Positions 1 through 14,191 of a DNA stretch of 64,000 nt are shown piece by piece. Position numbers and translations under genes: made by a program. How positions within the stretch are numbered: position 1 is the first letter of the stretch; every line of letters begins with the position of its first letter. The notes under the pieces are model-generated. The model was not told the origin of the DNA and ran no database searches. It saw only the letters and a program-made list of their open reading frames with translations. The stretch lies in the IMG/VR virus record IMGVR_UViG_3300032053_000002, positions 124,001 to 188,000 of that record; one strand, 5' to 3'.

Positions 1-35
1 GAAAACGTTCTCTGATGCGGGTTGACATCGTTATA

Positions 36-65
36 CCGCTCCAGCTCCGCTCCAGCTCCGCTCCA
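36..65. repeat. 11-bp tandem repeat (CCGCTCCAGCT x2.7)
   Basis: Units at 36-46, 47-57 and partial 58-65 read directly. Confidence 0.8.
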
Positions 66-131
66 AATAGATATGGAGATTTTTTGCCCTGGAAAATAAC
101 TTACAGTTTGCAAAGAGTTATATAGTGGGAA

Positions 132-743
132 TTATAAGTTAATTTTTTTTATAGTGACATTGATTACAGGTGTTTGACGTAATAGCATATGATGATACTT
201 ATTCAGTGAGTCAATAGAGTTTTGTGTTAGTGTATCATCACTGATAAGTTTGTCGCGGATTTTTAGTATACTTTCCAATATATGAGGGCGAGTCCGTGAT
301 ATGTCGACCGTAGCCGCTACGGTCGCGACGTTTTTATAACCGCTATCTATATTCTTGTATAATTTTTCTATCTTAGCTAATAGATATATTTTCTTTATAT
401 AGCGAGTCGCCGCGGGGTGTTCCTTAATTATATGTTTAGTGAAATTGGGTCTATCGAAAAAGAATACAGTTTCCACATTTTCAATCAGCTTGAAATACTT
501 GGGATCATCTTTAAGGATGCCGCCGTTCGCAATACGATATATTTCTTCATGAGTACCTGTTAACTTTATTCTACTCGCCCCTTCTTTAATCTCGGCGACG
601 GTATTAAATACTTTCAGATTTTTCGGGAATGGAACTTCATATGATTCACCGACGTTAAAATGCGGTTCCCCATCTGAAATCTCTATCATTCCCACCGTAG
701 TAAAACGATAGCCGCTATCATTTATAAACTTATATGCCTTCAT
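132..743 (-). CDS. Hypothetical protein with the shared helical 'L..KL..L...LT...LN' module
   Basis: 203-aa ORF overlapping the next gene; LAKIEKLY...LTQNSIDSLNKYH. Confidence 0.75.
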   Translation of the reverse strand: MKAYKFINDSGYRFTTVGMIEISDGEPHFNVGESYEVPFPKNLKVFNTVAEIKEGASRIKLTGTHEEIYRIANGGILKDDPKYFKLIENVETVFFFDRPNFTKHIIKEHPAATRYIKKIYLLAKIEKLYKNIDSGYKNVATVAATVDISRTRPHILESILKIRDKLISDDTLTQNSIDSLNKYHHMLLRQTPVINVTIKKINL

Positions 744-1167
744 TGTTATACTTTCTATTTATCTTGTTCAACTTTTTAACTTCGTCGCCAGTCAATCTAG
801 ACCGATTAAACTTGGTGCCTTGTATTGTACCAGGCGCCAATAAGTCACGCGACGCAGGAGTTTTGCCAGCAGTAGAGAGAACTATAAATCTCGCTATAAT
901 TTCACCCACATAATCATGCGCCATCTTTGATCCAGGTCTGGTTGTATCATTCATACGTCCCAATGTAGCGTACAGTTTCAGTAATCTCCGATAGATATTA
1001 TACCCTTTATACAAACTTATAAACAGCTGCTTAGCAGTAGTTAAATTCCGCGATGCATAGGTTTTTGGTATATCTTTTAATGTTAGTTCCGATTCCACCA
1101 ATGAATATGTCGCCAGTACTTCACCGTTTTCCACGTACAGGTATTTAATCCATTTTCCAGGTAACAT
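730..1167 (-). CDS. Hypothetical protein, paralog of 12306-12731 and 12728-13219
   Basis: LYKGYNIYRRLLKL...RLTGDEVKKLNKINR matches LYKGTTIWRRLKEL...RLTDEEVKMLNKINR. Confidence 0.8.
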   Translation of the reverse strand: MLPGKWIKYLYVENGEVLATYSLVESELTLKDIPKTYASRNLTTAKQLFISLYKGYNIYRRLLKLYATLGRMNDTTRPGSKMAHDYVGEIIARFIVLSTAGKTPASRDLLAPGTIQGTKFNRSRLTGDEVKKLNKINRKYNNEGI

Positions 1168-1172
1168 ATTCC

Positions 1173-3425
1173 TTAATTCCTTTTAATCGTCGAGAACAAA
1201 GAATTCAACTCTTTAGCAAGCGGAACCAGTTGATCAACCCTGATGAAGCGACTATCCTTACCGTACATTTCGCGGAAAGTTACAGCGGAACTAGACGTGG
1301 TATCTACGCGATCACTTACGAAAAAGGACATAACCCGAATACCGTTTGCTCTCATTTTATCTACGGCTTCTTTTGTCAGAGTTTCAATATCCTTAATCCC
1401 ATTATAGCTGTTAGGTTCACCGTCGCTGATGTTGATGAAGTACGATACTTTTCCGACACTACTATTAAGTATTTCTTTCATCGTCGCCTCGAAACACAAT
1501 CCTTCGGGAGTACCACCAGTGGAACACATCATAGAGAAGTATTTACGAAACTTACCGAAACTGTCTTTGCGACTATCATACGCAAGCAGAACCGTCGGCG
1601 CTTGCATACCATTAGTAACGTAGTAATCCCACCGAAGAGAAATCATAACTTTTAAGTTATTCACCTGAGTAGCAGCGTAGGCTAAAGCCGACACCATAGT
1701 CATCGTCCTATTCCACTTATCACCCCCCATAGACGATGACGCGTCAATACTAATATGTAGCATCGCTTCACCGAAAGTGTCCTTAGTAACCTGTGAAAAG
1801 ACAGATTCCAAATCATATCCCAGTCCGTGAAGTAACCGTTTTTCCAGATGGCCGGTTTGTTTACGAATAAGTTTAGTAACCTTTGTCTCGTTACGAATCT
1901 GTAAGCGATTCGCCAACATCTTGCCTAACCGAATTCCGAGATTGACATACGTTTCAGACGGCTTACGATTGGAGTTATGAAATAAACTATCGCGCATCAA
2001 ATGCATCGACTCGTCGTTCAGTTCGCGAATGACAACTACTTGTACACCTTCTTTACTTTCACCATGACTGTCAGATTCAGTACCGGTAGCGCCATCACCA
2101 ACTTTAGTTTTTTTCCCACCAACGTTCTCAACCGTCGTACCGGACGCATCCATTGCGTTAATTATTTCGTGCTCGTCTTTAGTGATAGCACCTTTCTTTA
2201 CTTTTCCATTTACCAGTTCTTTTATTTCTTCAATAGCCTTTTTCAACTGTTTTTTCTGTTCTTTTGTCAGTTCATCTCCAGATTGTGGCGTTCCGTCTCC
2301 GACATTAACCATATCACCGTCTTGCAACTTATCTATTGGGTTATCGTGTTTCGAATCACCGTCATCTTTTTTATCACCGTCTTTGCTGTCGCCAGAGTCT
2401 TTGTCTTTTTTATCACTACCGTCAGAGTCTTTATCTTTTTTATCACTGTCGCCAGAACCGCCACCACTATCACCAGATTCTTCTCCACCATCACCGCTAT
2501 CGCCAGATTCTTTTTCATCACCACTATCTTTTGTCTGCGACTCATCACCGGTTTCCGTAGGTTTATTTAACGGATGGTCAACCGGAAGCGGGTCAATGTT
2601 TTCTAACACAACCGTAAAAATCTTTTCGGCGACTATACGAGAATCGGACGTACTTTCCAGGCGGTCGATATTGTCAATATCAAATATGTTACTGATTTTA
2701 TCTAAACCAGGAAGTGCATTCAGGTCAATGTTACTTTTATCAGACGCCAGACCGTAGAAGCGAAAATGATAACTTTCAAGATTTCTCTCGCGATAGTAAC
2801 TTGATTTCAATCCAAGAGCAACTATTTTCGCGTTCCAATATCTATTATACAACGATGTATAATATGGTCTATAACCGATAACTTTGTCCATCATAATACG
2901 GTCAATGCGACGATCTTCAATAAAGTTCCAGTAGTCAAAGAACAACTTTTCCAACTCTTCTTTATTGGTTATGTTTTTTGTAGCGGCTAAAGCCGTGATT
3001 GATGGGGTTACATTTATAGTTCCAGTTTTAAGAAACTCACTGTACAATATGTGACTGGACTCGTGGAGTGCTAACCCGACAACCGTATCAAAATCTTTGT
3101 TAGTAACGTTAGCACTAATAAAGACATTTTTACTGTCGGTCATACTATGATCTTGAACGTTAAACAATACTTTGATTTTTTTGTCGCGAGTCGCGATGTG
3201 GACAAACCTGGCGACCGCTCTGCGAATAGACGACATTTCGATAAGCGATTTCTTATCTTTTTCTTCTGGGATAGCACGTAGCCAGTAACGAGAATACAGA
3301 TTGGCGGTAGAGTAATCTTCATCTTCCCGAAAACCAAATCGCGTCTTGAAGAAATCTTTCGCCATTTCCTTATCGTATGCTTCGTCGGCTTTATTTTTGC
3401 CACCGAATAAGTTTTTTATACTCAA
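1173..3425 (-). CDS. vWA-domain protein with N-terminal HExxH metallopeptidase-like domain (CobT-like partner of MoxR ATPase)
   Basis: HESSH (aa121-125) followed by IEDRRID; D/G/S/K-rich linker; C-terminal MIDAS motifs IDASSSM, GGTPEG, ISDGEP. Confidence 0.85.
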   Translation of the reverse strand: MSIKNLFGGKNKADEAYDKEMAKDFFKTRFGFREDEDYSTANLYSRYWLRAIPEEKDKKSLIEMSSIRRAVARFVHIATRDKKIKVLFNVQDHSMTDSKNVFISANVTNKDFDTVVGLALHESSHILYSEFLKTGTINVTPSITALAATKNITNKEELEKLFFDYWNFIEDRRIDRIMMDKVIGYRPYYTSLYNRYWNAKIVALGLKSSYYRERNLESYHFRFYGLASDKSNIDLNALPGLDKISNIFDIDNIDRLESTSDSRIVAEKIFTVVLENIDPLPVDHPLNKPTETGDESQTKDSGDEKESGDSGDGGEESGDSGGGSGDSDKKDKDSDGSDKKDKDSGDSKDGDKKDDGDSKHDNPIDKLQDGDMVNVGDGTPQSGDELTKEQKKQLKKAIEEIKELVNGKVKKGAITKDEHEIINAMDASGTTVENVGGKKTKVGDGATGTESDSHGESKEGVQVVVIRELNDESMHLMRDSLFHNSNRKPSETYVNLGIRLGKMLANRLQIRNETKVTKLIRKQTGHLEKRLLHGLGYDLESVFSQVTKDTFGEAMLHISIDASSSMGGDKWNRTMTMVSALAYAATQVNNLKVMISLRWDYYVTNGMQAPTVLLAYDSRKDSFGKFRKYFSMMCSTGGTPEGLCFEATMKEILNSSVGKVSYFINISDGEPNSYNGIKDIETLTKEAVDKMRANGIRVMSFFVSDRVDTTSSSAVTFREMYGKDSRFIRVDQLVPLAKELNSLFSTIKRN

Positions 3426-3455
3426 TCTATCTTTCCTTCTTTAATTGTATACCTA

Positions 3456-3527
3456 AATATACCACCCCCCGGCGTATCAGTCAACTGTTATTTTAACTAT
3501 TTTTTTAACCATATGAATTATTTCACA
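3456..3527 (-). promoter_or_regulatory. Sigma70-type promoter P1 with UP element and palindromic box
   Basis: TTGACT (3484-3479)-17 bp-TATATT (3461-3456); box TATGAA-TTAT-TTCACA at 3512-3527. Confidence 0.8.
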
Positions 3528-3540
3528 TGACCGTTCCTGG

Positions 3541-3584
3541 AAAAAAAGAAATACCCCCTGCACATAATGTATAGGGGGTATTTC
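3541..3584 (-). terminator. Intrinsic terminator after the AAA+ ATPase gene
   Basis: GAAATACCCCCT / AGGGGGTATTTC 12-bp stem followed by T7 on the minus strand. Confidence 0.85.
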
Positions 3585-3603
3585 GCCTTCTTAGGGAAGG
3601 ATT

Positions 3604-4911
3604 TTACATTAAGTCATCTTGATGAAACAGGTCGCCAGATCCAGCCACGACCGGTTCAACTTCTTCTTTTTCCTTTTTCTCTTTTTTCGGCTCTTTGACT
3701 ACATCTTTTTCGAACAGCGGCTCGGCGTCGAGGTTACTATATTGCTGAATGAACTGCAACAGATGTGTTCTTTCGGAATCGGCACCACCTTCACCGGAAA
3801 ACATATTCACCACACTGGCTTCCATCACTTCACTGAAAGTAAACCCATCGTTCAACATGCTAACCTGCGCGACAGTGGAGCGGATAGAAATCATGGTAGT
3901 CAGGGTTGGCGCTTCACTGGTAGCCTCTTTACGAGTATACCCGGCAACAGCAACAATACCCTTAATAAGTTTCTGGTTAATTTCAGGATATAAAAGTTTT
4001 AACAACTTGAATTCTTCGGCTTCAGTAGGAATATCCATTTCAATCATGACCGGAAAACGGTCTTTCGTAGCACGATCAATGATACGAGTAGCGGTGTATT
4101 CACCACCGACGTTAGCGGTCGTAAAGAACGTTACTCCAGGAGCGACATTGATTACAGGTGTTTTCGGGTCTTCATCCAACCGCACATAACGCTGATCCGG
4201 ATCGAGAATCGTCATAAGGATATTTTCAGCATCAGGATTGGCACGAGTTATTTCGTCCAAGAGAATTACAGCACCCGGTGTCGTAATGGCTTTGATAAAC
4301 TCAGACTTGACGAAGTAAGTACCGGTTTCCTTATTGAAGTGTGTGTTACCGATTAAAGTAGCACGAGCGTCCTGTGTAGCCCCAAGATTAAACTTGAAGA
4401 ACGGGCGACCCAGAACTTTACCGATAGTGCGACCGGTAAGTGTTTTACCGAATCCACTATAACCCGTAAAGATGATATTCTGGCCACGAAGAGCAGAGTG
4501 CACCGCATACTTCCATTTCAGTTCAGCCAATATGAGGGTCTTCGGTTTCAGTGAGATTGCGTTCTTGATAGCAGTACGTACATCTTCATCAGATGGGGTT
4601 ACGTATCCTGTATATTCAGATGGAGTAGTCGCCTCGACTGTGGGGTTGGCGACAACCGAAGTAGGCATAAGTGTAGAACCGTTACTATATTCATAGTCAA
4701 CGGGAACTTCATCGGCTTTCAAACGACGCCAGAAAACATTACCGGCCTTCGATACCACTTTTCCTAAGTAGATACCGTGGTCAGCCGCATGGCGACGAGC
4801 GCCGTAAGGTATTGGTTCGCTATACATCTTCTCCGTCTTGATTTCAATCGGGTTCAGATGAGAACCATCGCGAACGACTTTAACGATTACTAAAAATTTT
4901 GGTGATTTCAT
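3604..4911 (-). CDS. MoxR/CbbQ/CobS-type AAA+ ATPase
   Basis: Walker A GYSGFGKT, Walker B LLDEITRA, LIG..HF pre-sensor insert, TANVG sensor I, DRF arginine finger; adjacent vWA gene. Confidence 0.9.
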   Translation of the reverse strand: MKSPKFLVIVKVVRDGSHLNPIEIKTEKMYSEPIPYGARRHAADHGIYLGKVVSKAGNVFWRRLKADEVPVDYEYSNGSTLMPTSVVANPTVEATTPSEYTGYVTPSDEDVRTAIKNAISLKPKTLILAELKWKYAVHSALRGQNIIFTGYSGFGKTLTGRTIGKVLGRPFFKFNLGATQDARATLIGNTHFNKETGTYFVKSEFIKAITTPGAVILLDEITRANPDAENILMTILDPDQRYVRLDEDPKTPVINVAPGVTFFTTANVGGEYTATRIIDRATKDRFPVMIEMDIPTEAEEFKLLKLLYPEINQKLIKGIVAVAGYTRKEATSEAPTLTTMISIRSTVAQVSMLNDGFTFSEVMEASVVNMFSGEGGADSERTHLLQFIQQYSNLDAEPLFEKDVVKEPKKEKKEKEEVEPVVAGSGDLFHQDDLM

Positions 4912-4944
4912 GTAACTTTATTCCTTCCCTAAATTGTATACTTA

Positions 4945-5016
4945 AATATACCAAATCCCGGCTTACTAGTCAACTGCTATTTTAACTATTTTTTCAGCCT
5001 TGTGAATTATTTCACT
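4945..5016 (-). promoter_or_regulatory. Sigma70-type promoter P2 with UP element and palindromic box
   Basis: TTGACT (4973-4968)-17-TATATT (4950-4945); TGTGAA-TTAT-TTCACT at 5001-5016. Confidence 0.8.
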
Positions 5017-5296
5017 TGACCTTTTTCTTAGCGAATTCTGAAAACGTATCACTCTTTCGAGCGACAGTCGCTACTTTCATTAACCGCTTACCGAACACCC
5101 GATCACAATCTTTGTCAGCAAGAGTTTTCTCTATTCTTTGCTGAACTTTCGCCACAAGCGCCGGGTGGATGTTAAAAGACGTAACCTTATATCCCCATTC
5201 CCGAACTTCAAACTTGAATATGCCCACCTTTTTAGGCATTCGTTTCAGTATCGTTAAAGTCAGACGATTATCCTGTTCCTTAAATATCGCTTTCAT
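5012..5296 (-). CDS. Hypothetical basic protein
   Basis: 94-aa ORF tightly tiled with its neighbours. Confidence 0.7.
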   Translation of the reverse strand: MKAIFKEQDNRLTLTILKRMPKKVGIFKFEVREWGYKVTSFNIHPALVAKVQQRIEKTLADKDCDRVFGKRLMKVATVARKSDTFSEFAKKKVK

Positions 5297-5503
5297 TTAT
5301 AGCGCTCCCATTCTTTTTAATTTGTTAATTGCGGTATGCAGTTCGTGGCAAAGATATTTATGCGCAACAAACTTTTCAACATCCTCTTCTTTTCGAGCAC
5401 GGTGAACTATCGTATAGCGTTTGGATTCCTTAACCCACCCAAATACCAGCCATTCGCGATGCCCCCTCAATGTCTTAAATAATCTTGGTCTTCCCGATTT
5501 CAT
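5297..5503 (-). CDS. Hypothetical protein
   Basis: 68-aa ORF, stop/start coupled with neighbours. Confidence 0.65.
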   Translation of the reverse strand: MKSGRPRLFKTLRGHREWLVFGWVKESKRYTIVHRARKEEDVEKFVAHKYLCHELHTAINKLKRMGAL

Positions 5504-5952
5504 TATACTTGTTCCTTGTTATATTTCATGTATATTTTATTTAATTTTGTCGCCACCTTTTCACCTATCGGAATCTTCTCATCGGATGAAATGGCTCTTA
5601 ATACGGTTAGTATCAACATGCACGACTCTACCTCGTCACGATCTTCCCCCACAGCAATTAACTGTAATTTTTTCAGCTTCTCATATAGTATCGTAAAATC
5701 TTTTAATTCCACGACTTTCGCTTTGTAAATGTATAAAATTTCGCCTCTTTTGTATTTATCTACTTTCGGCGTATTATTAGGATCAGAATGTCGTATATCA
5801 AATACCATACTAAAAGTACCGCTGGCATTCCCATACAAATCGACTGTGCCCGACCAGGGTTCGGCAGGTTCTATCAAAGAACCACCTAACCCCTGCTTCT
5901 CGTACCCGTCTTTTTTATCGAATTCTATTATCTTGTATACCATATCAATCAT
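5503..5952 (-). CDS. Hypothetical protein with the shared helical module
   Basis: LYEKLKKL...VATKLNKIYMKY at the C-terminus. Confidence 0.7.
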   Translation of the reverse strand: MIDMVYKIIEFDKKDGYEKQGLGGSLIEPAEPWSGTVDLYGNASGTFSMVFDIRHSDPNNTPKVDKYKRGEILYIYKAKVVELKDFTILYEKLKKLQLIAVGEDRDEVESCMLILTVLRAISSDEKIPIGEKVATKLNKIYMKYNKEQV

Positions 5953-6202
5953 TTATCAGTAAAAGTTTCATCCCATCGATGGAAACATATCTCCAGCCAT
6001 GCGTTTCTCCTTCACCATCTTTGTCGGCTCCAGAAAATATAAAGGTTCGTTTTTCTCCAGTACTCTCGTTCAACACAGTAACACAATTGTATAAGTGATG
6101 GTTTTTCACACGACCACTCAAATCACTCCATTCCCATGCCAGTGTCCGGGTTTTCTTATCCCACCCATTTTTCATCAGTTGGTTATTTACAGTGATTATC
6201 AT
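5945..6202 (-). CDS. Hypothetical protein
   Basis: 85-aa ORF overlapping the next gene by 8 bp. Confidence 0.7.
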   Translation of the reverse strand: MIITVNNQLMKNGWDKKTRTLAWEWSDLSGRVKNHHLYNCVTVLNESTGEKRTFIFSGADKDGEGETHGWRYVSIDGMKLLLIND

Positions 6203-6203
6203 A

Positions 6204-6344
6204 TTATTTGATCCTCTTTGATGTTAAAAAACTGTAGATGACGTACATAACTGCGGCGAATGCGAACAGCATCGGTTCCGTTATCAGTAAGTAAGTCAGT
6301 ATCGCGACAACAAATATCGTTTCAAATGTCGCCTTCAATATCAT
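6204..6344 (-). CDS. Small membrane protein (46 aa, not in ORF track)
   Basis: Manual translation MILKATFETIFVVAILTYLLITEPMLFAFAAVMYVIYSFLTSKRIK; first gene after promoter P3. Confidence 0.6.
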   Translation of the reverse strand: MILKATFETIFVVAILTYLLITEPMLFAFAAVMYVIYSFLTSKRIK

Positions 6345-6374
6345 TTTTTTATTCACTTTACTTTTCATATTCAT

Positions 6375-6445
6375 ATATTACATCTTTCCGAATTATCAGT
6401 CAAATTATATTTTAACTATTTTTATTCTTTGTGAAAAATTTCACT
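6375..6445 (-). promoter_or_regulatory. Sigma70-type promoter P3 with palindromic box
   Basis: TTGACT (6403-6398)-17-TAATAT (6380-6375); TGTGAA-AAAT-TTCACT at 6430-6445. Confidence 0.75.
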
Positions 6446-6469
6446 TTATTTGTGTCCTATTTTTTAATT

Positions 6470-6781
6470 TTAATGCCAGTTAGTCTGATATACGGAACTT
6501 CCACTCCATACGTACGCGCGTTCAAAAGAAGAGATCGATATAAACTCGCGACCATCTTTGGTAAGTTTTACCTTTTTCATTTTATTTTCCATACGAGCAT
6601 AGTCATTACCGGCATTTAGGTCAGGTATAACGTAGTCGCTTAAACCGGTTTCCCTCTTCACGATCTTCTGCCCCACTCCGACAACCTTCACAGACTTAGC
6701 GGTCACGGCAACCACTTTATAAAAGTTTACGTTGGTCTGTTCATAACCCCAGCAACTTACGAGAATGTCATTTACTTTCAT
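6470..6781 (-). CDS. Hypothetical phage protein (WGYEQTNVNFY motif)
   Basis: Start moved to ATG at 6781 behind AAGGG RBS; motif recalled from phage hypothetical proteins. Confidence 0.75.
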   Translation of the reverse strand: MKVNDILVSCWGYEQTNVNFYKVVAVTAKSVKVVGVGQKIVKRETGLSDYVIPDLNAGNDYARMENKMKKVKLTKDGREFISISSFERAYVWSGSSVYQTNWH

Positions 6782-6783
6782 TA

Positions 6784-6981
6784 TTATTTCCCTTTTAGTT
6801 TTAGTGTCAACATAAATGGATACAACCGCGTCAACCACTTTTCTACTTCTTCCAAAAGTGTTTCGTCAGAAACCGTTGATTTTGTCCGTGGTCTTAGCCA
6901 AGCTGCGAGTTCTTTTTTTATTTCGTCGAATGGACGAGTAGTGTCAATCGTAAACGGTGCGTCATTTTTTGATTTACTCAT
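6784..6981 (-). CDS. Hypothetical protein
   Basis: 65-aa ORF in the operon. Confidence 0.65.
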   Translation of the reverse strand: MSKSKNDAPFTIDTTRPFDEIKKELAAWLRPRTKSTVSDETLLEEVEKWLTRLYPFMLTLKLKGK

Positions 6982-7076
6982 TTTATTTATGTCCTATTTT
7001 TTTACTTACCAGTGAATGTATCGTATAGCACATCGCCAGATTCGCGGCGACAACTACTAAAACAACGACTACCATT

Positions 7077-7442
7077 TTAATTAGTCCTCGACTTGGATGC
7101 ACGTAACCAGTCAGTATTGACTACTACCGGAACGACATCAGTGATCTTACCATTAGCAACTTTCGCTAACTGACCAATATATTTTTTGATTCTACGTTTG
7201 ATGATGGCGAACTGCTTGTCAGTGATAAACCCAAACCGTGAATAGAAGTTACCGATGCTGGTAAATATCTCACCATCGACACCAGTGAACCCCACTCCAT
7301 TATCTTCGGTCGTACCAACGAATGATTTTTCGCCACGAGTCTGAAGAGAATAGATTCTCAGGAAACCCTTGAATATGGCGTAGTCATTGTCTATCAGCAT
7401 ATTCGCTATATCTTCTTTATTATACTTTGGTTTTGTTTTCAT
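7077..7442 (-). CDS. Hypothetical phage protein (IY..QT..E...NGVGF..D motif)
   Basis: 121-aa ORF directly after promoter P4. Confidence 0.75.
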   Translation of the reverse strand: MKTKPKYNKEDIANMLIDNDYAIFKGFLRIYSLQTRGEKSFVGTTEDNGVGFTGVDGEIFTSIGNFYSRFGFITDKQFAIIKRRIKKYIGQLAKVANGKITDVVPVVVNTDWLRASKSRTN

Positions 7443-7450
7443 AATAGTAT

Positions 7451-7634
7451 AATATACAATTCCTCAGTATAACAGTCAAATTATTTTTTAACTATTCTTA
7501 CAGAGTGTGAAATTATTCACAAGATCGTCGCCGTGACTGGCGACTTGCCATCCCGAGCCTTGTGAAGTTTTTCACAAAGTAGCGGCTCAGCTTGACGCGA
7601 GCAAGCGGCCGGCCGCGTTGTGAAATTTTTCACA
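7451..7634 (-). promoter_or_regulatory. Sigma70-type promoter P4 with three palindromic boxes
   Basis: TTGACT (7479-7474)-17-TATATT (7456-7451); boxes at 7506-7521, 7561-7576, 7619-7634 (last two are perfect TTGTGAA-N4-TTCACAA). Confidence 0.85.
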
Positions 7635-7644
7635 AGCGACTGTA

Positions 7645-8000
7645 ATAAAAAAGTCCTACGTCCGTGACTTCCATGTAGCCTCGGGTTGCGATCCCGTTCG
7701 TCATGGCCTCGTCACGTAATTCGTAGGACTTTTCTCACCTAAGTCGTTTCCGACTGTCCACATTACCTGCTAGCCGGCGGGATAGTTGGATGGGCGACGA
7801 CTCCCATCATCTCATACCGACACATACGGCCGGTGCGCCTTTCTTCCTTAGACCACAACTATTTTCGGTGATTCTCGCGATTTCTGCCGAATTCGCGATA
7901 CTTTTATTCATTTCTCAAAGAACAAAAGAGTGCCCCGTAGGACACCCCCGAACGTTCTCCCGGGGAGTGTCCTCCACGCGGGTATACGTTCCATATTTGA
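7645..8000 (-). ncRNA. Candidate ~350-nt structured RNA (may encode a 34-aa peptide)
   Basis: Lies between promoter P5 and an 85-nt hairpin plus U-tract; hairpins at 7939-7973, 7789-7808, 7742-7755 (GAAA loop) and 7649-7733. Confidence 0.5.
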
Positions 8001-8006
8001 TATACT

Positions 8007-8035
8007 AATATACAACTTCTTGGCGAGAAAGTCAA
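8007..8035 (-). promoter_or_regulatory. Sigma70-type promoter P5
   Basis: TTGACT (8035-8030)-17-TATATT (8012-8007) with the same UP element TAGTTAAAATAACAG. Confidence 0.8.
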
Positions 8036-8043
8036 CTGTTATT

Positions 8044-8223
8044 TTAACTAAATGGGGAATCTCGATCTTCTAACTCGTCGAGCGTACGCTTGAAATCTTC
8101 GAGCGTCTCAATATATTTCAACTTCAGCTGCTTGTTTTCTTTAAGCAATCGCTCCACTTCCTTCTTCAACTCGGAGATGGTTTTCAGCATCTCGATCTTA
8201 TTCTTTAGTTCAGCGGTAGTCAT
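8044..8223 (-). CDS. Small coiled-coil protein (59 aa, not in ORF track)
   Basis: Manual translation MTTAELKNKIEMLKTISELKKEVERLLKENKQLKLKYIETLEDFKRTLDELEDRDSPFS. Confidence 0.65.
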   Translation of the reverse strand: MTTAELKNKIEMLKTISELKKEVERLLKENKQLKLKYIETLEDFKRTLDELEDRDSPFS

Positions 8224-8249
8224 ATCTTATCCTTATTTTTAAGTCTTAG

Positions 8250-8474
8250 TTATAGAACAAAAAAAACCGCTCGGTTCTTTCCAACCTTTTCATACGTCAA
8301 CACCCTTGAAGGGCGGAAATCGCTCAAATAACCGGCGAGTTCATCCAAAGAATCGAAATACTTCGGCGAAAAAAACTTATCAGGATCGGGGTCTTTTTCC
8401 AATACCCATCGCTTGTTGAGCATTTTGCGCCGATTTTTGACCTTGTTGGCGAAATAATGGTCGGTGGTTTTCAT
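8250..8474 (-). CDS. Hypothetical protein
   Basis: 74-aa ORF, AAGGAA RBS. Confidence 0.65.
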   Translation of the reverse strand: MKTTDHYFANKVKNRRKMLNKRWVLEKDPDPDKFFSPKYFDSLDELAGYLSDFRPSRVLTYEKVGKNRAVFFVL

Positions 8475-8504
8475 ATATTGTTTCCTTTTTTTATATTTTA
8501 ATCT

Positions 8505-8580
8505 TGGGGTGCACGGTGAGATTCGAACTCACGCTCCGCGGGTCACAGCCGCGTAATGCTACCGCTACATCACGCGCACC
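8505..8580 (-). tRNA. tRNA-His (GUG)
   Basis: Cloverleaf: G-1, acceptor GTGCGCG/CGTGCAC, anticodon arm CGCGG-CT GTG AC-CCGCG, TTCGAAT loop, C73 and encoded CCA. Confidence 0.95.
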
Positions 8581-8587
8581 ATATATT

Positions 8588-8770
8588 TTATCCTGAGAAA
8601 GCTTTTTCCAATGTTATTCGTTGCAACACTTCCCAGTATAACTTCGGCATTGCCTTCTTATCGATCATTTCCGATATATTCCGAGCCGATCCGAATTCGT
8701 CTTCAAAAGCCTGTTCGGACTTCTCAATGTACTTTTTTACTTCTTTTAAAAACGTCATGTTACTCTTCAC
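8588..8770 (-). CDS. Hypothetical protein
   Basis: GTG start at 8770 behind AAGGAG, downstream of promoter P6; the track start at 8809 overlaps the promoter. Confidence 0.65.
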   Translation of the reverse strand: MKSNMTFLKEVKKYIEKSEQAFEDEFGSARNISEMIDKKAMPKLYWEVLQRITLEKAFSG

Positions 8771-8799
8771 GGCGAAACTCTCCTTAATTTTTATACTAT

Positions 8800-8828
8800 A
8801 ATATAACACCTATCAGCTTACCAGTCAA
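8800..8828 (-). promoter_or_regulatory. Sigma70-type promoter P6
   Basis: TTGACT (8828-8823)-17-TATATT (8805-8800). Confidence 0.8.
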
Positions 8829-8837
8829 CTGCTATTT

Positions 8838-9275
8838 TTACTTATTTTTTGCGTATGCATTTAGTGCCCATCTCCACATTTCGTTTAAAAACCCAACGTC
8901 TTTTATACTGAGTTTGCGGGTTTTTAAAAATTCTTTATAAAATAACGTTATTTCCGTTGCTGATTCGGTACACCCGACATTCTTTAAACTACTAATTAAA
9001 AGCTCAATTTTTTCGCTGATTCTTTTTATTTTCTCTTCGGGCGACTCTACTCTTTCTAGTACGAAAAATGGAAAATTATATCCGCTATCAAGATGAATTC
9101 CTTTACTTCCGCTACAAATAAACGTTATGTCGCCCTCTTCACCGACATATTTGTCCATCATAGAAGTCCAAGTATTATCCCATCCATTTTCATGATTATG
9201 AGCAATCATTACAACTTTTACTCTGTCGCCAACTTTGAATCCGGCAGCTTTTTGTTTGATTTCGTATTCACTCAT
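8838..9275 (-). CDS. Hypothetical protein, SH3/KOW-like N-terminus plus helical module; paralog of 9272-9706
   Basis: FKVGDRVKV...W.NTW...M.K.VG; EKIKRISEKIELLISSL...LSIKDVGFLN. Confidence 0.8.
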   Translation of the reverse strand: MSEYEIKQKAAGFKVGDRVKVVMIAHNHENGWDNTWTSMMDKYVGEEGDITFICSGSKGIHLDSGYNFPFFVLERVESPEEKIKRISEKIELLISSLKNVGCTESATEITLFYKEFLKTRKLSIKDVGFLNEMWRWALNAYAKNK

Positions 9276-9706
9276 TTTTTAATATACGCTTTCCATATTG
9301 CATTTAAATACTCAACATCGTCTATACTGAATTTATGACTTTTTTTAAATCGCGCGTACATTTTATACACTTCGTTAGCAACACGTTTGCATCCGTTATT
9401 CTGTAAACCACTAATTAAACGCTCAAACTTTTCACTTACTCTCTTTATTTTCTCATCGGACGACTTCACTTTTTTCAGTACGGAAGGTGGGAATCTGTAT
9501 GTCGGGCCTTTACGGGGAATACTTTCTAAACGAATTCCTGCGGTCTTATGAATATCGGATATAACCATTATTTTGCCAACACTTTTATTCATCTCAAGTA
9601 CCCATGTATTCCGCCACTCACTCGTGTAGCTCTCAGCAATACCGGTAACTTTTACTTTGTCGCCGATTTTGAACTGGGTGGGGGTTCTCTTTTTTCCTGG
9701 CGACAT
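9272..9706 (-). CDS. Hypothetical protein, tandem paralog of 8838-9275
   Basis: FKIGDKVKV...WRNTW..EMNKSVG; EKIKRVSEKFERLISGL...FSIDDVEYLN. Confidence 0.8.
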   Translation of the reverse strand: MSPGKKRTPTQFKIGDKVKVTGIAESYTSEWRNTWVLEMNKSVGKIMVISDIHKTAGIRLESIPRKGPTYRFPPSVLKKVKSSDEKIKRVSEKFERLISGLQNNGCKRVANEVYKMYARFKKSHKFSIDDVEYLNAIWKAYIKK

Positions 9707-9708
9707 CT

Positions 9709-10263
9709 CTACACACTCTCCAAATATGCGTGATTTAACCCGCCTTTTTTATTACTGTATATAGACACTTCTGCATCAAGTTCACTGGGAGTATTACTTA
9801 CCCAACCGAAGAACTTCTTTCTACAATCACTGTGACGACAGAAGTCAACTTGCGGACCGTCAACCGGTTTACCACAGTAGTGGCAATACCTTTCTTCACG
9901 AAACATTTCTGTTTTCGGAAGTAAACGTTTCCATAGGGAAATATCCTTCCGCTTATACGTTTTCTTCACCACTGCGGGACTTCCAAATATAACTTCACCA
10001 TGCAACTTAGCGAGATAAGGTCTTATCCATTTTACCGAGTATTCCACCACGGCGACTCGCTTATAAGTGTATTTATAATCGAACAACTTATCCATAGCGT
10101 CTTGCTGTTTTCTAATCAACTCCAGCATACCTGAATCATCTTTCACAGTAACGGTAATCCCCAGCTCACTATTCTTGAAAACTAGGAAGGTACGCCCGAC
10201 TTTATACGCAAAAGATACTTTCGCGTCTCCGTATGTCTCGTAAAACTTTTTTTCGTTCATCAT
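9709..10263 (-). CDS. Hypothetical protein with C-terminal zinc finger
   Basis: CHYC...CRHSDC; first gene after promoter P7. Confidence 0.7.
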   Translation of the reverse strand: MMNEKKFYETYGDAKVSFAYKVGRTFLVFKNSELGITVTVKDDSGMLELIRKQQDAMDKLFDYKYTYKRVAVVEYSVKWIRPYLAKLHGEVIFGSPAVVKKTYKRKDISLWKRLLPKTEMFREERYCHYCGKPVDGPQVDFCRHSDCRKKFFGWVSNTPSELDAEVSIYSNKKGGLNHAYLESV

Positions 10264-10285
10264 TATTCTTTTCTCCTATACCTAA

Positions 10286-10388
10286 AATATACCACTTCTC
10301 AGCGTATCAGTCAAGAACTATTTTCGCTATAGCGGCATTCCGGACGGCAATGCGGTCGTAACTAGAGCCCTTCGTGAACTTTTTCACA
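10286..10388 (-). promoter_or_regulatory. Sigma70-type promoter P7 with palindromic box
   Basis: TTGACT (10314-10309)-17-TATATT (10291-10286); CGTGAA-CTTT-TTCACA at 10373-10388. Confidence 0.75.
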
Positions 10389-10421
10389 TACGGTCTGTAC
10401 GTTTTCTGTAAGTGGTTTTTC

Positions 10422-10493
10422 AATCCGCTCGCTCCTCTCGGTTGCAATCCGCTCGCTCCTCTCGGTTGTCAATTCGCTCGCTCCTCTCGGTTG
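10422..10493. repeat. Three tandem copies of a 23-bp core AAT(C/T)CGCTCGCTCCTCTCGGTTG
   Basis: Copies at 10422, 10446 and 10471 (periods 24 and 25 bp), no spacers. Confidence 0.9.
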
Positions 10494-10586
10494 TAGGGGG
10501 CAACTCGGTAGACGTGTCAGGCGAGTTCAGAACCGTGCATGCAAATAGGCAGCCTGAAGTGTGTTCGTCGTGTGGGGGGGTTCTTG

Positions 10587-10658
10587 GCGGGAGTTTGTGG
10601 TTTGTGCGGGAGTTCTTGCGAGAGTTTGCGCGGGAGTTCTTGCGGGAGTTTGCGCGAG
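10587..10658. repeat. G-rich GCGGGAGTT repeats (24-bp unit x2 plus partials)
   Basis: GCGGGAGTTCTTGCG(A/G)GAGTTTGC at 10606-10629 and 10630-10653. Confidence 0.85.
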
Positions 10659-10833
10659 GAATCGTGGAGAAGTGGGGGCATGGGGGTGGCGGTGCTTCCG
10701 ACGAGTAGCAATTGCGCATCGGCAATACCTGCGACCCACTATTATAATATTATCCGAATATCAAAAAGGCGTGGATTATTTATTTATAATAGGGAAGTGA
10801 TTATCAATTCCAGCAAGTTGTATCAAATAGGCG

Positions 10834-10913
10834 AGTGATATGCAGCGATATGCAGTGATATGCAGCGATATGCAGTGATATGCAGTGATATGCAGTGATA
10901 TGCAGCGATATGC
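10834..10913. repeat. 10-bp tandem repeat TGCAG(C/T)GATA, 7 full copies plus partial flanks
   Basis: Full copies 10841-10910 read directly. Confidence 0.95.
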
Positions 10914-10929
10914 GCTGTAATATATATGG

Positions 10930-11688
10930 CTAATAACGTTGTATAAAAGCGAGTTCCGATTTAAGATTAGAAAGAAAGAAATGTTCATCAGTAGTTCTAT
11001 CGAATACTATTGTAGCATCGTGTATAGTAGGTTGATCATAAATTAGTTTCGGATCTATATTATTTTTAGAATAGTCGCCGATTAGTTGTTTGGCCAGAAC
11101 ATTTAATGTTTGTAAATCATCTTTTTTTAAAGATGGTCGCAGTAACAAATGGTCTACAAATATAAATCGTAATCTTGCCTGAAAGCGTTCTTCTGATATT
11201 AAATACTCAAATATTCTCTCATATTTCGAAGTATCATTTTCCCATAATGCATAGGATTCGCGAAGAATATGTCTCAATTTGTTTAATATCGTATAGTATT
11301 TATTTATGTAATATTTTTCGCCGAGGTGATTCGTATGATATTTACTTCTCCAGAATTCAAGCCGGGTTGAAACACTAACATCTTTACTAAGAAGGCTTTG
11401 CAGATGATTAATAGAAAAAAATGTTTCACTTTGATTGAGTAACTTGCGAACTTCATTAAAATCATAGCTTTCGCCTTCTTGCGAAGTTTGGGCAGATTTA
11501 TTTAGACACTTAGATACGATTTGGTGCTCTATTATTTTATAGTGCGAAAAATCTTTATCATACATTAAAACACCGCCGATTGGCAGCGCTTCTGCATAAA
11601 ACACATAAGAGCGAATATGTATTTTGTTGTCTTTATAAAAAGATTTTAAGTTGATAGCGTGAACAGGTACTATATTTGTATTAGACAT
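10930..11688 (-). CDS. Hypothetical protein, paralog of 14192-14893
   Basis: VPVHAINLK / LPVHVINLR; YYTILNKLRHIL / YFRILNKLKYLY. Confidence 0.75.
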   Translation of the reverse strand: MSNTNIVPVHAINLKSFYKDNKIHIRSYVFYAEALPIGGVLMYDKDFSHYKIIEHQIVSKCLNKSAQTSQEGESYDFNEVRKLLNQSETFFSINHLQSLLSKDVSVSTRLEFWRSKYHTNHLGEKYYINKYYTILNKLRHILRESYALWENDTSKYERIFEYLISEERFQARLRFIFVDHLLLRPSLKKDDLQTLNVLAKQLIGDYSKNNIDPKLIYDQPTIHDATIVFDRTTDEHFFLSNLKSELAFIQRY

Positions 11689-11694
11689 AACTAT

Positions 11695-11943
11695 TTATTT
11701 CGCCAACCAGGCCCAATATTTTGGAGTTCCGTAAGCACCTATTGACAAACCGTTGCACCATATGGTGCAACGGTTACCGTTGTACCATTGTAAAGGATTT
11801 AGTTCGTCTTTCCATGGCGAAAATGATACGGCTCTATTGTGGTTGAACCATACCAGAATAGCACTATTATAATCAACCGTATTAACGTCTGGCGGGTCGC
11901 CTTCAATCCACTCCAAATCAAGCGGTGATTTTGTTATTTTCAT
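11695..11943 (-). CDS. Hypothetical Trp-rich protein
   Basis: 82-aa ORF in the tiled operon. Confidence 0.65.
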   Translation of the reverse strand: MKITKSPLDLEWIEGDPPDVNTVDYNSAILVWFNHNRAVSFSPWKDELNPLQWYNGNRCTIWCNGLSIGAYGTPKYWAWLAK

Positions 11944-11952
11944 AAGTCGTTC

Positions 11953-12309
11953 CTATTTTTCTTTTATTGTAAACGTGCTGTCAGTAGGTTGAGTAATGAT
12001 GTAGTGATTGTCCCCTATTACTACTGGGATTTCGCGTGGTTTGGATCTAAATTGATTACTTTTCAATATACGAGAAATTTCCATTAACTTGCGCCTTGGT
12101 TCATCATACTTTCGGAATATTATAAACTTTTCTTTTTGAAAGTTGATTTCGTCGATAACCGCAAACAACGAATCACCAATCTCTTTTGAAAAACTATTTT
12201 TTTCGGAGAGTATCTTAAAAATAACCGTCAACTCTTCGGTTGGTTCTATATCACAACCGAGCGACATTAAAAATATAGAACATAATAATAATAACATTAA
12301 ATTTTTCAT
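11953..12309 (-). CDS. Putative lipoprotein
   Basis: MKNLMLLLLCSIFLMSLGC signal peptide with lipobox-like SLGC. Confidence 0.6.
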   Translation of the reverse strand: MKNLMLLLLCSIFLMSLGCDIEPTEELTVIFKILSEKNSFSKEIGDSLFAVIDEINFQKEKFIIFRKYDEPRRKLMEISRILKSNQFRSKPREIPVVIGDNHYIITQPTDSTFTIKEK

Positions 12310-12731
12310 TTTTTAACTCCAATTATTTTTGCTATTTTATTTAATCTTAACACATCATATTCGGTAAGGCGAGTACCCGAAAGATGAGTCCAATTTTCAT
12401 TGGCTCCGTAACTCTCAACAAACTTTTCTACTAAACGATTAACATAAATTCGATCTCCCCACGCCTTTTGTTTGGAGTATGATAAATATATCCCATCGTT
12501 TATAAACCTATTAAGTTTATTCGATAATATTTTTAATCGTCGCCAGATAGTTAAACCCTTGTATAAACCGTCTATTTTCTTCTTTGCCTCGTCAACCGTC
12601 ATTATATCATAATAGTTGGCCGGAACTTCAAGTATAACCATAATCTGAGAATCGGGTTTCCATTCGGCTATTGCGGGTACGCGACGATCTTCATAACAAA
12701 AATTTCCAACCCACGTCAAAACATCATTCAT
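12306..12731 (-). CDS. Hypothetical protein, LYKG..IWRRL family
   Basis: L.WV...CYE; LYKGLTIWRRL; RLTEYDVLRLNKI. Confidence 0.8.
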   Translation of the reverse strand: MNDVLTWVGNFCYEDRRVPAIAEWKPDSQIMVILEVPANYYDIMTVDEAKKKIDGLYKGLTIWRRLKILSNKLNRFINDGIYLSYSKQKAWGDRIYVNRLVEKFVESYGANENWTHLSGTRLTEYDVLRLNKIAKIIGVKK

Positions 12732-13219
12732 CTATTCTTATTTCCTTCAACGCACCTATTTATTTTATTTAGCATTTTTACTTCTTCGTCAGTTAGTCTC
12801 GACTCAAATCGCGGTATAACTTTTATGCTTCCAGGAACTTCGGCGGACTCTAGATAAGTAACAAATTTGCCAATTAGCCCATTAACATACCTTTCGTATT
12901 CTTCCAATACCAGAGACATTTTGGCGTAAGAAGATGGATAGTCTTTGTATTTAACCACCAGAGTTTTTTCCAGTTCAATAATTTTAAGTAGTAATTCTTT
13001 TAATCTTCGCCAGATGGTTGTGCCCTTATACAGGTCGTTCATCGCAACTTTTGCTACATCGAGGCTTAGGCAATCATGGTATACGTGCGGAACTTCGTGT
13101 AATATTAAAGATTTTTCTTCTGCGTTATAAGTCGCTATCTTATTAGAAGACCCGGTTTTCACGTCGCCTTCGTAACATTCATCATCAACCCATTGTAAAG
13201 TATTTTTTATTGCGTTCAT
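12728..13219 (-). CDS. Hypothetical protein, LYKG..IWRRL family
   Basis: LQWVDDECYE; LYKGTTIWRRL; RLTDEEVKMLNKINR. Confidence 0.8.
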   Translation of the reverse strand: MNAIKNTLQWVDDECYEGDVKTGSSNKIATYNAEEKSLILHEVPHVYHDCLSLDVAKVAMNDLYKGTTIWRRLKELLLKIIELEKTLVVKYKDYPSSYAKMSLVLEEYERYVNGLIGKFVTYLESAEVPGSIKVIPRFESRLTDEEVKMLNKINRCVEGNKNR

Positions 13220-14180: not shown

Positions 14181-14191
14181 AACTTTTATTC

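What the first reader, a model, noticed from the sequence alone, without database searches (positions are those of the whole stretch)
10320..10929. 600-bp GC-rich non-coding block with three repeat families directly upstream of the promoter battery: candidate genome end, packaging site or origin
Seen: no credible ORF; a 3x 24/25-bp repeat, G-rich 24-bp repeats with strong strand asymmetry, an AT-rich stretch (10741-10800) and a 10-bp tandem array. The densest set of strong promoters starts immediately downstream in the direction of transcription. Known: T7, T5 and SPO1 place short repeats and strong host-RNAP promoters next to the first-injected terminus, and iteron plus AT-rich layouts mark origins. 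Inference: a terminal-repeat boundary or replication origin.
Basis: partly seen in the sequence, partly recalled or inferred. Interest (0 to 1): 0.6.

Follow-up and report, generated by a model that had tools for sequence, protein, structure and literature searches.

The report
Likely terminal-repeat boundary of jumbo phage
The 666-bp gene-free, repeat-packed block is real. It most likely marks where a long terminal repeat carrying the earliest genes begins in an uncultured 293-kb sediment phage, because sequencing depth doubles inside it in several samples. Other giant phages have the same kind of feature.

Summary
Window 10264-10929 is a 666-bp gene-free interval (48% GC in a ~35% GC genome). 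It holds three tandem families: 24/25 bp x3, a G-rich 12/24-bp family, and 10 bp x8. None occurs anywhere else in the 292,723-bp phage contig. It also holds the most G-over-C skewed 140 bp of the genome.

The first of a battery of near-identical sigma-70-type promoters (TTGACT-N17-TATATT, all on the minus strand) sits at 10314-10286.

New evidence comes from Logan contigs of independent sediment runs. K-mer depth is about 2.2x higher left of the block than right of it (36.3 vs 16.5; 15.3-16.6 vs 7.1). Flow through the 10-bp array shows the drop happens inside one contig, without a graph branch. That pattern fits a collapsed long direct terminal repeat of at least 10.8 kb, as in XacN1, PA5oct, T5 and SPO1.

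The repeat probably runs to a second untranslated repeat block 10.4 kb downstream. The stretch between the two blocks has higher GC3 and its own promoter subtype.

Limits: no raw reads were available, so no read termini were seen. The far boundary was not measured. TerL is T4-like, the headful type. No close relatives were found.

Verdict: a new member of a known kind, of moderate interest.

The parts
10264..10929 (.). Whole untranslated block (666 bp, GC 0.48) between the last gene of the single-depth side and the first gene of the double-depth side
10834..10913 (.). 10-bp tandem array, 8 units (AGYGATATGC; 20-bp super-period x4). It sits on the single-depth side. It is 4 units long in three other samples.
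   Evidence: copy-number allele and local depth ~18
10741..10800 (.). AT-rich dip (GC 0.25) between the GC-rich part and the 10-bp array
10560..10700 (+). G-rich segment (C-rich on the transcribed strand) containing the 12/24-bp repeats at 10571-10659 and a G7 run at 10574-10580. It has the most extreme G>C skew in the genome. The depth step in run X2 falls at about 10575.
10420..10494 (.). Three direct 24/25-bp iteron-like repeats, unique in the genome and unchanged in a variant strain
10286..10314 (-). First promoter of the battery: TTGACT, 17-nt spacer, TG-extended TATATT. A GGAG ribosome-binding site and the ATG of gene 9709-10263 follow.
3456..10314 (-). Promoter battery: six near-identical sigma-70-type promoters with an AAAATA upstream element and unusually GC-rich spacers
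132..10263 (-). Early module on the double-depth side: 15 genes and a tRNA-His. Most are ORFans; one is a MoxR-like AAA+ ATPase. GC3 is 0.416 against 0.313 elsewhere.
1..131 (.). In-window part of a second untranslated repeat block (genome 123,479-124,131). It holds a 46-bp unit in about 3.5 tandem copies, a 23-bp x2 repeat and an 11-bp x2.7 repeat. It is the candidate far boundary of the repeat, and the high-depth Logan contig ends inside it.
10930..11688 (-). Last gene before the block (252 aa, no family match, TAG stop), on the single-depth side

Best explanation
The block is the junction between unique sequence and a long direct terminal repeat (DTR) that the assembly collapsed into one copy.

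In the virion, the DNA from roughly window 10,300-10,830 leftwards would be present at both ends of a linear genome. That stretch is at least 10.8 kb. It probably runs to the second repeat block at genome 123.5-124.1 kb. One physical end would therefore lie inside this block.

The repeated segment carries the first genes to be expressed. They are ORFans read by the host RNA polymerase from a battery of strong sigma-70-type promoters that start about 100-500 bp inside the repeat.

By inference only, the three unique tandem families are cis-acting sites. The one-helical-turn 10-bp array and the G-rich repeats lie on the unique side, and the 24/25-bp iterons lie just inside the repeat. The packaging machinery could use them to recognise and cut the concatemer at a fixed place and to regenerate the repeat. 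This parallels the untranslated multi-repeat regions at the T5 long-terminal-repeat border and the short-repeat arrays flanking the T7 terminal repeat.

Shown here: the anatomy, its uniqueness, the promoters, and the depth step without a branch. Inferred: the physical terminus, the far boundary, and the role of each repeat.
For: 1. Depth step.
- Run X1: the contig covering window -208..10863 (11,072 nt) has mean k-mer depth 36.3. The contig covering 10856-16447 has 16.5.
- Run X2: contigs at 4343-8602 and 9265-10164 have 15.3 and 16.6. Contigs at 10575-12617 and 12634-14073 have 7.06 and 7.18. The bin 10392-10575 reads 18.5 and the next bin reads 8.7.
- Run X3: about 7.3-8.0 on the left against 2.5-6.2 on the right.

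2. No branch. Inside the 10-bp array, the 32-nt piece made of the two k-mers that occur twice per array has depth 36.5, and the loop piece has 18.6. The flow entering from the left contig is therefore about 17.9, half that contig's mean. The drop happens within one unbranched contig. The 292.7-kb JGI contig also runs straight through.

3. Not GC bias. Contigs of GC 0.397 and 0.365 still differ 2.3-fold in depth.

4. The double-depth side is a discrete unit.
- It has the densest promoter cluster, with its own GC-rich spacer subtype.
- Its GC3 is 0.416 against 0.313 elsewhere.
- It consists mostly of ORFans.
- Untranslated repeat blocks sit at both ends.

5. Nearly all genes lie on one strand, and the promoter-rich region with all tRNAs begins at the block. 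That fits a genome with a fixed leading end.

6. In a variant strain the block has 3 substitutions in 543 nt. The adjacent 707 nt have 29 substitutions plus 32 gap letters.

7. Precedents.
- XacN1's 66-kb DTR was found as a 2x-depth collapsed region and carries tRNAs, including CUA suppressors (PMC5852040).
- PA5oct has a 39-kb DTR holding early genes read by host RNA polymerase (PMC7318152).
- T5's untranslated Repeat Region 3 straddles the long-terminal-repeat border and is better conserved than the ORFs inside the repeat (10.1101/866236).
Against: - Only Logan contigs were available, so there is one depth figure per contig. No read starts or ends could be seen.
- Samples X2-X4 contain strain mixtures that complicate the depth ratios.
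- The large terminase is gp17-like. Its nearest characterised relatives package by headful without fixed ends.
- The higher GC3 of the module also fits a horizontally acquired island.
- No relatives are close enough to test whether the position is conserved.
- The two boundary blocks share no significant sequence.
Confidence: 0.55

Rival explanations
1. The block is a pac-type start site for headful packaging. The T4-like terminase begins series here and packages leftwards, so DNA just downstream of the site is over-represented because of terminal redundancy. There would be no exact terminal repeat.
For: TerL is gp17-like. Unique repeat arrays could be small-terminase binding sites. There is a one-sided depth step at the block.
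Against: A step of about 2.0-2.3x in several samples would need essentially one headful per series. Processive series give smaller, staircase-like excess. The block lies 132 kb from the terminase gene, whereas classical pac sites lie in or next to terS. The high-depth zone coincides with a compositionally distinct module.
Confidence: 0.12
2. The block is an iteron-type replication origin firing in one direction. The depth step would be the saw-tooth of replicating DNA in infected cells, not a terminal repeat.
For: The block has direct iterons (3 x 24/25 bp; 8 x 10 bp) beside a 60-bp AT-rich dip and the genome's most skewed G/C segment. There is a sharp step without a branch.
Against: The ratio is nearly the same, about 2, in different samples, whereas replication ratios should vary. 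There is no skew inflection. DnaA-like boxes are not enriched. No Rep3-type initiator is found, and the flanking genes have no replication domains. T4-like replication modules do not use iteron initiators as a rule (my own background knowledge).
Confidence: 0.12
3. The block is the border of a horizontally acquired 10-11 kb module. The extra depth would come from a second replicon in the same sediments that carries an identical module.
For: GC3 is 0.416 inside the module against 0.313 outside. Non-coding repeat blocks flank it. Strain alleles exist within the module in X2-X4.
Against: A shared segment with different flanks would branch the graph. Yet the X1 contig runs from the double-depth zone into the single-depth array, and the JGI contig spans both borders. 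The flanking proteins were found only in this genomic context. The module has no integrase or transposase hit. The ratio stays near 2 in different samples.
Confidence: 0.1
4. The block is a purely regulatory upstream region. The arrays would bind a phage or host protein that controls or insulates the first early promoter, and the depth step would be unrelated.
For: The 10-bp phasing suits cooperative binding on one face of the helix. The iterons lie 106-180 bp upstream of the -35 element.
Against: The motifs occur nowhere else, although 35 similar promoters exist. This reading does not explain the depth step. The array tolerates halving of its copy number.
Confidence: 0.08

Closest known systems
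Phage T5 long terminal repeat with its untranslated Repeat Regions (Repeat Region 3, the injection stop signal region; Davison, bioRxiv 10.1101/866236)
   Same: Both have a terminal repeat of about 10 kb holding pre-early ORFan genes under strong host-type promoters. Both have an untranslated block of about 0.6-1.2 kb packed with several different direct-repeat families, including a 9-copy short repeat in T5. In both, the block straddles the repeat/unique border and is better conserved than the neighbouring ORFs.
   Different: There is no sequence similarity. The T5 block is rich in inverted repeats, palindromes and paired DnaA boxes; here no inverted repeats were found and DnaA-like boxes are not enriched. 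T5 is a 122-kb siphovirus with a different terminase, whereas this is a 293-kb phage with T4-like PolB and TerL. Two-step injection is not testable here.
Jumbo myoviruses with long DTRs: Xanthomonas phage XacN1 (66 kb), Pseudomonas phage PA5oct (39 kb), Pectobacterium phage CBB (22 kb)
   Same: These are giant genomes with many tRNA genes, including a CUA suppressor. In XacN1 the DTR collapsed in assembly and was revealed by 2x depth. In PA5oct early genes read by the host RNA polymerase lie in the DTR.
   Different: The measured double-depth stretch here is only known to be at least 10.8 kb, and the tRNA cluster lies outside the proposed 10.8-kb unit. Those phages were not among the 30 best TerL matches listed, though they were not compared directly. 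No boundary repeat blocks came up in the passages of those papers that I read.
T7 terminal repeat with flanking short-repeat arrays (SRL/SRR) and early promoters A1-A3 (Dunn and Studier 1983; recalled from memory, not checked here)
   Same: Arrays of short tandem repeats flank the terminal repeat. Strong host-polymerase promoters lie a few hundred bp inside the leading end. All genes are on one strand.
   Different: The T7 repeat is 160 bp and the genome 40 kb. The repeat units differ, and T7 has its own RNA polymerase.
SPO1 13.2-kb terminal redundancy with its host-takeover module
   Same: Both have a long terminal repeat filled with small early genes, each with its own strong host-type promoter (as summarised in PMC5852040).
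   Different: The phage lineage is unrelated. I know of no comparable boundary repeat block in SPO1, but I did not check.

Membership tests
Long direct terminal repeat (T5/SPO1/XacN1/PA5oct type) boundary | The segment is present twice per genome, so it shows about 2x depth in a collapsed assembly | tested here: met
   Depth is 36.3 vs 16.5 (X1) and 15.3-16.6 vs 7.06-7.18 (X2). X3 gives about 2x. These are contig means only. GC bias is excluded.
Long direct terminal repeat (T5/SPO1/XacN1/PA5oct type) boundary | The depth change occurs without an alternative junction, meaning no graph branch | tested here: met
   Flow through the 10-bp array gives 36.5 - 18.6 = about 17.9 at the right end of a contig whose mean is 36.3. 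The JGI contig spans the block.
Long direct terminal repeat (T5/SPO1/XacN1/PA5oct type) boundary | Fixed molecule ends, seen as read-start pile-ups at both boundaries | not testable with these tools
   All runs that hold the sequence are kept as contigs, with no raw reads.
Long direct terminal repeat (T5/SPO1/XacN1/PA5oct type) boundary | A second boundary where depth returns to 1x | not tested
   The candidate is the repeat block at genome 123,479-124,131, where the high-depth contig ends and the GC3 island ends.
Long direct terminal repeat (T5/SPO1/XacN1/PA5oct type) boundary | Early or host-takeover genes with host-polymerase promoters inside the repeat | tested here: met
   Six consensus promoters lie within 6.8 kb, and the genes are mostly ORFans. 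Expression timing was not measured.
Long direct terminal repeat (T5/SPO1/XacN1/PA5oct type) boundary | A terminase of a clade known to make long DTRs | tested here: inconclusive
   TerL is gp17-like: 52% identical to Microcystis phage Mel-JY01, 49% to Flavobacterium phage immuto, and about 30% to T4-like cyanophages. No tree with reference packaging types was built.
Iteron-type replication origin | Direct iterons next to an AT-rich unwinding element | tested here: met
   3 x 24/25 bp and 8 x 10 bp repeats, plus 60 bp at GC 0.25.
Iteron-type replication origin | A cognate initiator gene adjacent or elsewhere in the genome | tested here: not met
   No Rep3_N match in the genome. The flanking genes have no replication domains.
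Iteron-type replication origin | A strand-composition inflection at the site | tested here: not met
   Cumulative GC skew falls monotonically through the block and the whole contig. The skew is dominated by one-strand transcription, so this is a weak test.
pac site of headful packaging | A headful-type (gp17-like) large terminase | tested here: met
   PF03237 hit at genome 267,028-267,510, and tblastn relatives.
pac site of headful packaging | The site lies in or beside the small-terminase gene, and the depth excess is below 2x and staircase-like | tested here: not met
   The block is about 132 kb from TerL, and the step is about 2.0-2.3x. The staircase shape was not testable.
CRISPR array | Repeats separated by unique spacers of similar length | tested here: not met
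   All three families are head-to-tail without spacers.
Structured non-coding RNA | An Rfam match, or folding energy below that of shuffled sequence | tested here: not met
   No Rfam hit in the block. Folding z-scores are +0.49 (minus strand) and +0.90 (plus strand).
Plasmid-type centromere (ParR/ParB-bound repeat array) | A phased short-repeat array with an adjacent partition operon | tested here: not met
   The 10-bp array is present, but the genome has no ParB_N match and the neighbouring genes have no family hits. ParM and ParA were not searched.

The most novel reading that the evidence does not exclude
A phage with T4-like replication and packaging genes may have evolved a T5-style leading-end cassette. 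This would be a compositionally distinct terminal repeat of about 10.8 kb, holding immediate-early genes and bounded on both sides by untranslated multi-repeat blocks. The blocks would act as cis signals for exact end formation and possibly for staged DNA entry, as in T5 first-step transfer. The G-rich, telomere-like strand and the helically phased 10-bp array would be a previously undescribed terminase or end-binding recognition module.
Probability: 0.12. Interest if true: 0.7.

Novelty: new member of a known kind. Interest (0 to 1): 0.4.

Why it matters
If the block is a terminal-repeat boundary, the true genome of this uncultured 293-kb phage is linear with fixed ends. It is also at least 10.8 kb longer than the contig. 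The correct start of its map is here, not at the contig ends, which merely break inside repetitive fibre genes.

It would add a sediment phage with T4-like core genes to the short list of giant phages with long terminal repeats. It would also give a concrete, unique set of candidate cis-acting packaging sites to test.

More generally, depth flow through Logan contigs can reveal collapsed terminal repeats in metagenomic phage contigs that catalogues label 'linear fragment'.

Tried and rejected
- Close relatives: none found. Megablast and blastn of the block and 6 kb around it against GenBank phages gave nothing. Peptide-pattern searches of IMG/VR with both flanking proteins, the Band_7 protein and PolB gave no relatives.
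- The AAA+ ATPase search returned only unrelated phages carrying a widespread ATPase.
- A TerL-profile search found relatives of at most 60% identity, mostly fragments. Of the four larger related records that could be searched, three had no match to the promoter consensus and one had two isolated matches. Position conservation could therefore not be tested.
- Pattern scans for the 10-bp array in IMG/VR and for the iteron in JGI metagenomes returned only the source contig plus single chance hits.
- Structured RNA, CRISPR array, protein-coding and centromere readings were rejected.
- TAG recoding was considered because a CUA-anticodon tRNA is present and the upstream gene ends in TAG. It was rejected as a genome-wide code: 51 ordinary genes end in TAG, and the apparently ORF-free left end of the contig is one open-ended ORF in the standard code.
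- Homology between the two boundary blocks was sought. Only short, non-collinear matches of chance level were found. For example, one shared 10-mer has about 0.8 such matches expected by chance by my own estimate, and ACTTCAGGC occurs 4x in one block and 1x inverted in the other.
- GC bias as the cause of the depth step was rejected.
- Loose-end sequences from the read laying mostly do not belong to this genome, so they gave no extra depth points.
- Literature searches for Mel-JY01 and immuto gave nothing on their genome ends.

Full report
**Context**

The window is bases 124,001-188,000 of a 292,723-bp IMG/VR virus contig from a sediment metagenome. IMG/VR classes it as 'linear', and CheckV estimates it 91% complete. 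It is a jumbo phage.
- 374 of 415 crude ORF calls lie on the minus strand, and cumulative GC skew falls monotonically over the whole contig.
- It encodes 45 tRNAs, including one with a CUA anticodon, and a tmRNA.
- It has a T4-type family-B DNA polymerase, 44% identical to that of Microcystis phage Mel-JY01.
- It has a gp17-like large terminase at genome 266,113-267,711. This is 52% identical to Mel-JY01, 49% to Flavobacterium phage immuto, and about 30% to T4-like cyanophages.
- The contig ends fall inside repetitive genes: an open-ended ORF of at least 2,405 aa with 162-bp repeats on the left, and collagen-like repeats on the right. They are assembly breaks, not physical ends.

**The observation**

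The finding lies in the 666-bp interval 10264-10929, between two minus-strand genes (10930-11688 upstream, 9709-10263 downstream). JGI's gene calls leave the interval empty. The ORFs inside it have no Pfam match, and the 24- then 25-bp repeat spacing breaks any frame.

Read in the direction of transcription (right to left), the interval contains:
- a 10-bp array of 8 units (10913-10834);
- a 60-bp AT-rich dip at GC 0.25 (10800-10741);
- a 140-bp segment that is G-rich on the plus strand, with 12/24-bp repeats and a G7 run (10700-10560);
- three 24/25-bp direct repeats (10494-10420);
- a consensus promoter, TTGACT-17-TGnTATATT (10314-10286), followed by a GGAG ribosome-binding site and the ATG.

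All three repeat families are unique in the genome. No other non-coding locus has three arrays. The G-rich segment is the most G-over-C skewed 140-bp window of the genome, at +53 against +28 for the next.

The promoter belongs to a family of 36 sites, all on the minus strand. Twenty-eight of them lie between genome 34.9 and 134.3 kb. The first six after the block sit within 6.8 kb and share a distinctive GC-rich spacer and an AAAATA upstream element.

**What it is not**
- Rfam finds nothing in the block.
- Neither strand folds better than shuffled sequence, with z = +0.49 and +0.90.
- The repeats have no spacers, so it is not a CRISPR array.
- The block has no inverted repeats.
- DnaA-like boxes are not enriched.
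- The genome has no Rep3-type initiator and no ParB.
- There is no skew inflection.

**New evidence: a depth step**

Seven public sediment runs hold the stretch, but all are kept only as Logan contigs. I laid four of them on window 8000-13500.

In X1, probably the source sample, the contig to the left has mean k-mer depth 36.3. It is 11,072 nt long and covers window -208 to 10863. The contig to the right (10856-16447) has depth 16.5.

In X2, the left contigs (4343-8602 and 9265-10164) have depths 15.3 and 16.6. The right contigs (10575-12617 and 12634-14073) have 7.06 and 7.18. The bin 10392-10575 reads 18.5 and the next bin reads 8.7.

X3 gives about 7.3-8.0 on the left against 2.5-6.2 on the right. 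X4 is a strain mixture and is roughly compatible.

GC content cannot explain the step, because contigs of GC 0.397 and 0.365 still differ 2.3-fold.

The 10-bp array gives a local measurement. With k = 31, exactly two k-mers occur twice in the 8-unit array. They form a 32-nt piece of depth 36.5, and the loop piece has depth 18.6. The flow entering from the left contig is therefore about 17.9, which is half that contig's own mean.

So the fall from double to single depth happens inside one unbranched contig, somewhere between about 10,300 and 10,830. X2 points to about 10,575. The 292.7-kb JGI contig also crosses the block.

A segment shared with another replicon would branch the graph at its borders. 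A collapsed terminal repeat, or any physical DNA end, would not.

**The double-depth side is a discrete unit**
- The high-depth contig ends at genome ~123,792. That is inside a second untranslated block (123,479-124,131) with its own repeats: a 46-bp unit in about 3.5 tandem copies, a 23-bp x2 repeat and an 11-bp x2.7 repeat.
- The 15 minus-strand genes between the two blocks have GC3 0.416, against 0.313 for the other 357.
- They are almost all ORFans. The exceptions are a MoxR-like AAA+ ATPase and three PHROG families of unknown function. The module also carries a second tRNA-His.
- The two blocks share no significant sequence.

**Population data**
- The 10-bp array has 4 units instead of 8 in X2, X3 and X4. 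This allele needs a k-mer that the 8-unit array cannot supply, so it is real and not an assembly collapse.
- In a variant strain (X4, one 2,285-nt contig), the block from 10304 to 10846 has 3 substitutions in 543 nt. The 707 nt to its left have 29 substitutions and 32 gap letters. This is one comparison only, but it suggests the untranslated block is more constrained than the neighbouring gene and promoter.

**Interpretation**

The simplest reading is a long direct terminal repeat collapsed by assembly, with one physical end of the virion DNA inside this block.

The precedents fit closely.
- XacN1's 66-kb repeat was discovered as a 2x-depth region of a collapsed contig. It carries tRNAs, including CUA suppressors (PMC5852040).
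- PA5oct's 39-kb repeat holds genes transcribed early by the host polymerase (PMC7318152).
- T5's ~10-kb repeat holds pre-early genes. Its border is straddled by a 1.2-kb untranslated region with many direct-repeat families, which is better conserved than the ORFs (10.1101/866236).
- From memory, T7 has short-repeat arrays on both sides of its terminal repeat.

How each array works is inference only. The 10-bp phasing suits cooperative protein binding on one helical face. The unique-side arrays and the repeat-side iterons could position the terminase cut and the regeneration of the repeat.

**Weaknesses**
- Depths are contig means.
- No read termini could be seen.
- The far boundary was not measured, so the repeat is only known to be at least 10.8 kb.
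- The terminase is of the T4 type, which normally packages by headful.
- The GC3 island also fits horizontal acquisition.

A pac start site, a unidirectional origin producing a saw-tooth depth profile, a shared module, or a purely regulatory region therefore remain possible. I put the terminal-repeat boundary at 0.55.

**Relatives**

No close relative exists in the collections searched. TerL relatives reach 60% identity at most. Of the four larger related records searched, three had no match to the promoter consensus and one had two isolated matches. Conservation of position could not be tested.

**Verdict**

The feature is real and statistically exceptional within its genome. It most likely marks a genome end at a long terminal repeat. 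That makes it a new member of a known kind, with an unusual combination of T4-like core genes and a T5-like leading-end layout. Interest is moderate.

Noticed in passing
window 1-131, continuing to genome 123,479 (L009:3479-4131): A second 653-bp untranslated block lies 10.4 kb downstream. It holds a 46-bp unit in about 3.5 tandem copies (two of them identical), a 23-bp x2 repeat, an 11-bp x2.7 repeat (CCGCTCCAGCT, window 36-65) and a stretch that is C-rich on the plus strand. A rare plus-strand gene (231 aa, no Pfam hit) with a hairpin terminator converges on it. The high-depth Logan contig ends inside the 46-bp repeat.
   Followed up: partly
window 10834-10913: The 10-bp array is polymorphic in nature: 8 units in the reference and source sample, and 4 units in three other sediment runs.
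   Followed up: yes
window 132-10263: The module between the two repeat blocks has GC3 0.416 against 0.313 for the rest of the genome. Its promoters have GC-rich spacers, unlike the 30 other promoters of the family.
   Followed up: partly
window 8505-8579: A tRNA-His (GTG) lies inside the early module. It is a second copy, about 83% identical to the tRNA-His in the main tRNA cluster at genome 78,067-78,139.
   Followed up: partly
genome 36,140-110,858 (outside the window; L004-L008): The genome has 44 further tRNA genes plus a tmRNA (tag GNYSLAYAA). One tRNA has a CUA anticodon (genome 74,629-74,702) and one has a 4-base anticodon call, caga (81,704-81,779). TAG is nevertheless used as an ordinary stop in 51 genes.
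   Followed up: partly
window 8635-8714: Contigs from three other runs skip 78 nt here, between the tRNA-His and the promoter at 8828. This is a deletion or replacement allele present at about half the local depth in X2.
   Followed up: no
window 21704-23317, 53529-54836, 60623-62134, 38307-39668: A NodU/Nol-like carbamoyltransferase, an aminotransferase, a glycosyltransferase and a protein with a weak partial DNA-methyltransferase-like match lie in the last part of the genome before the block. They could form a DNA- or sugar-modification cluster. A related phage (immuto) appears in a paper on 7-deazaguanine DNA modifications.
   Followed up: no
window 16214-17284: A phage-encoded Band_7/SPFH-family protein (356 aa; PHROG 200).
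   Followed up: no
window 1173-4911: A MoxR/CbbQ-like AAA+ ATPase (435 aa) sits next to a 750-aa ORFan inside the early module. Homologues of the ATPase at 45-53% identity are widespread in IMG/VR contigs.
   Followed up: partly
genome 1-7216 and 274,571-275,719, 292,628-292,723 (outside the window): An open-ended ORF of at least 2,405 aa with 162-bp repeats runs off the left contig end. Collagen-like Gly-rich repeats occur in a 583-aa gene and at the right contig end. The contig therefore breaks in repeats, not at genome ends.
   Followed up: partly
genome 120,532-120,647 (outside the window; L009:532-647): Another tandem repeat, 27 bp x4.3 at 91% identity, lies 3 kb beyond the second block.
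   Followed up: no
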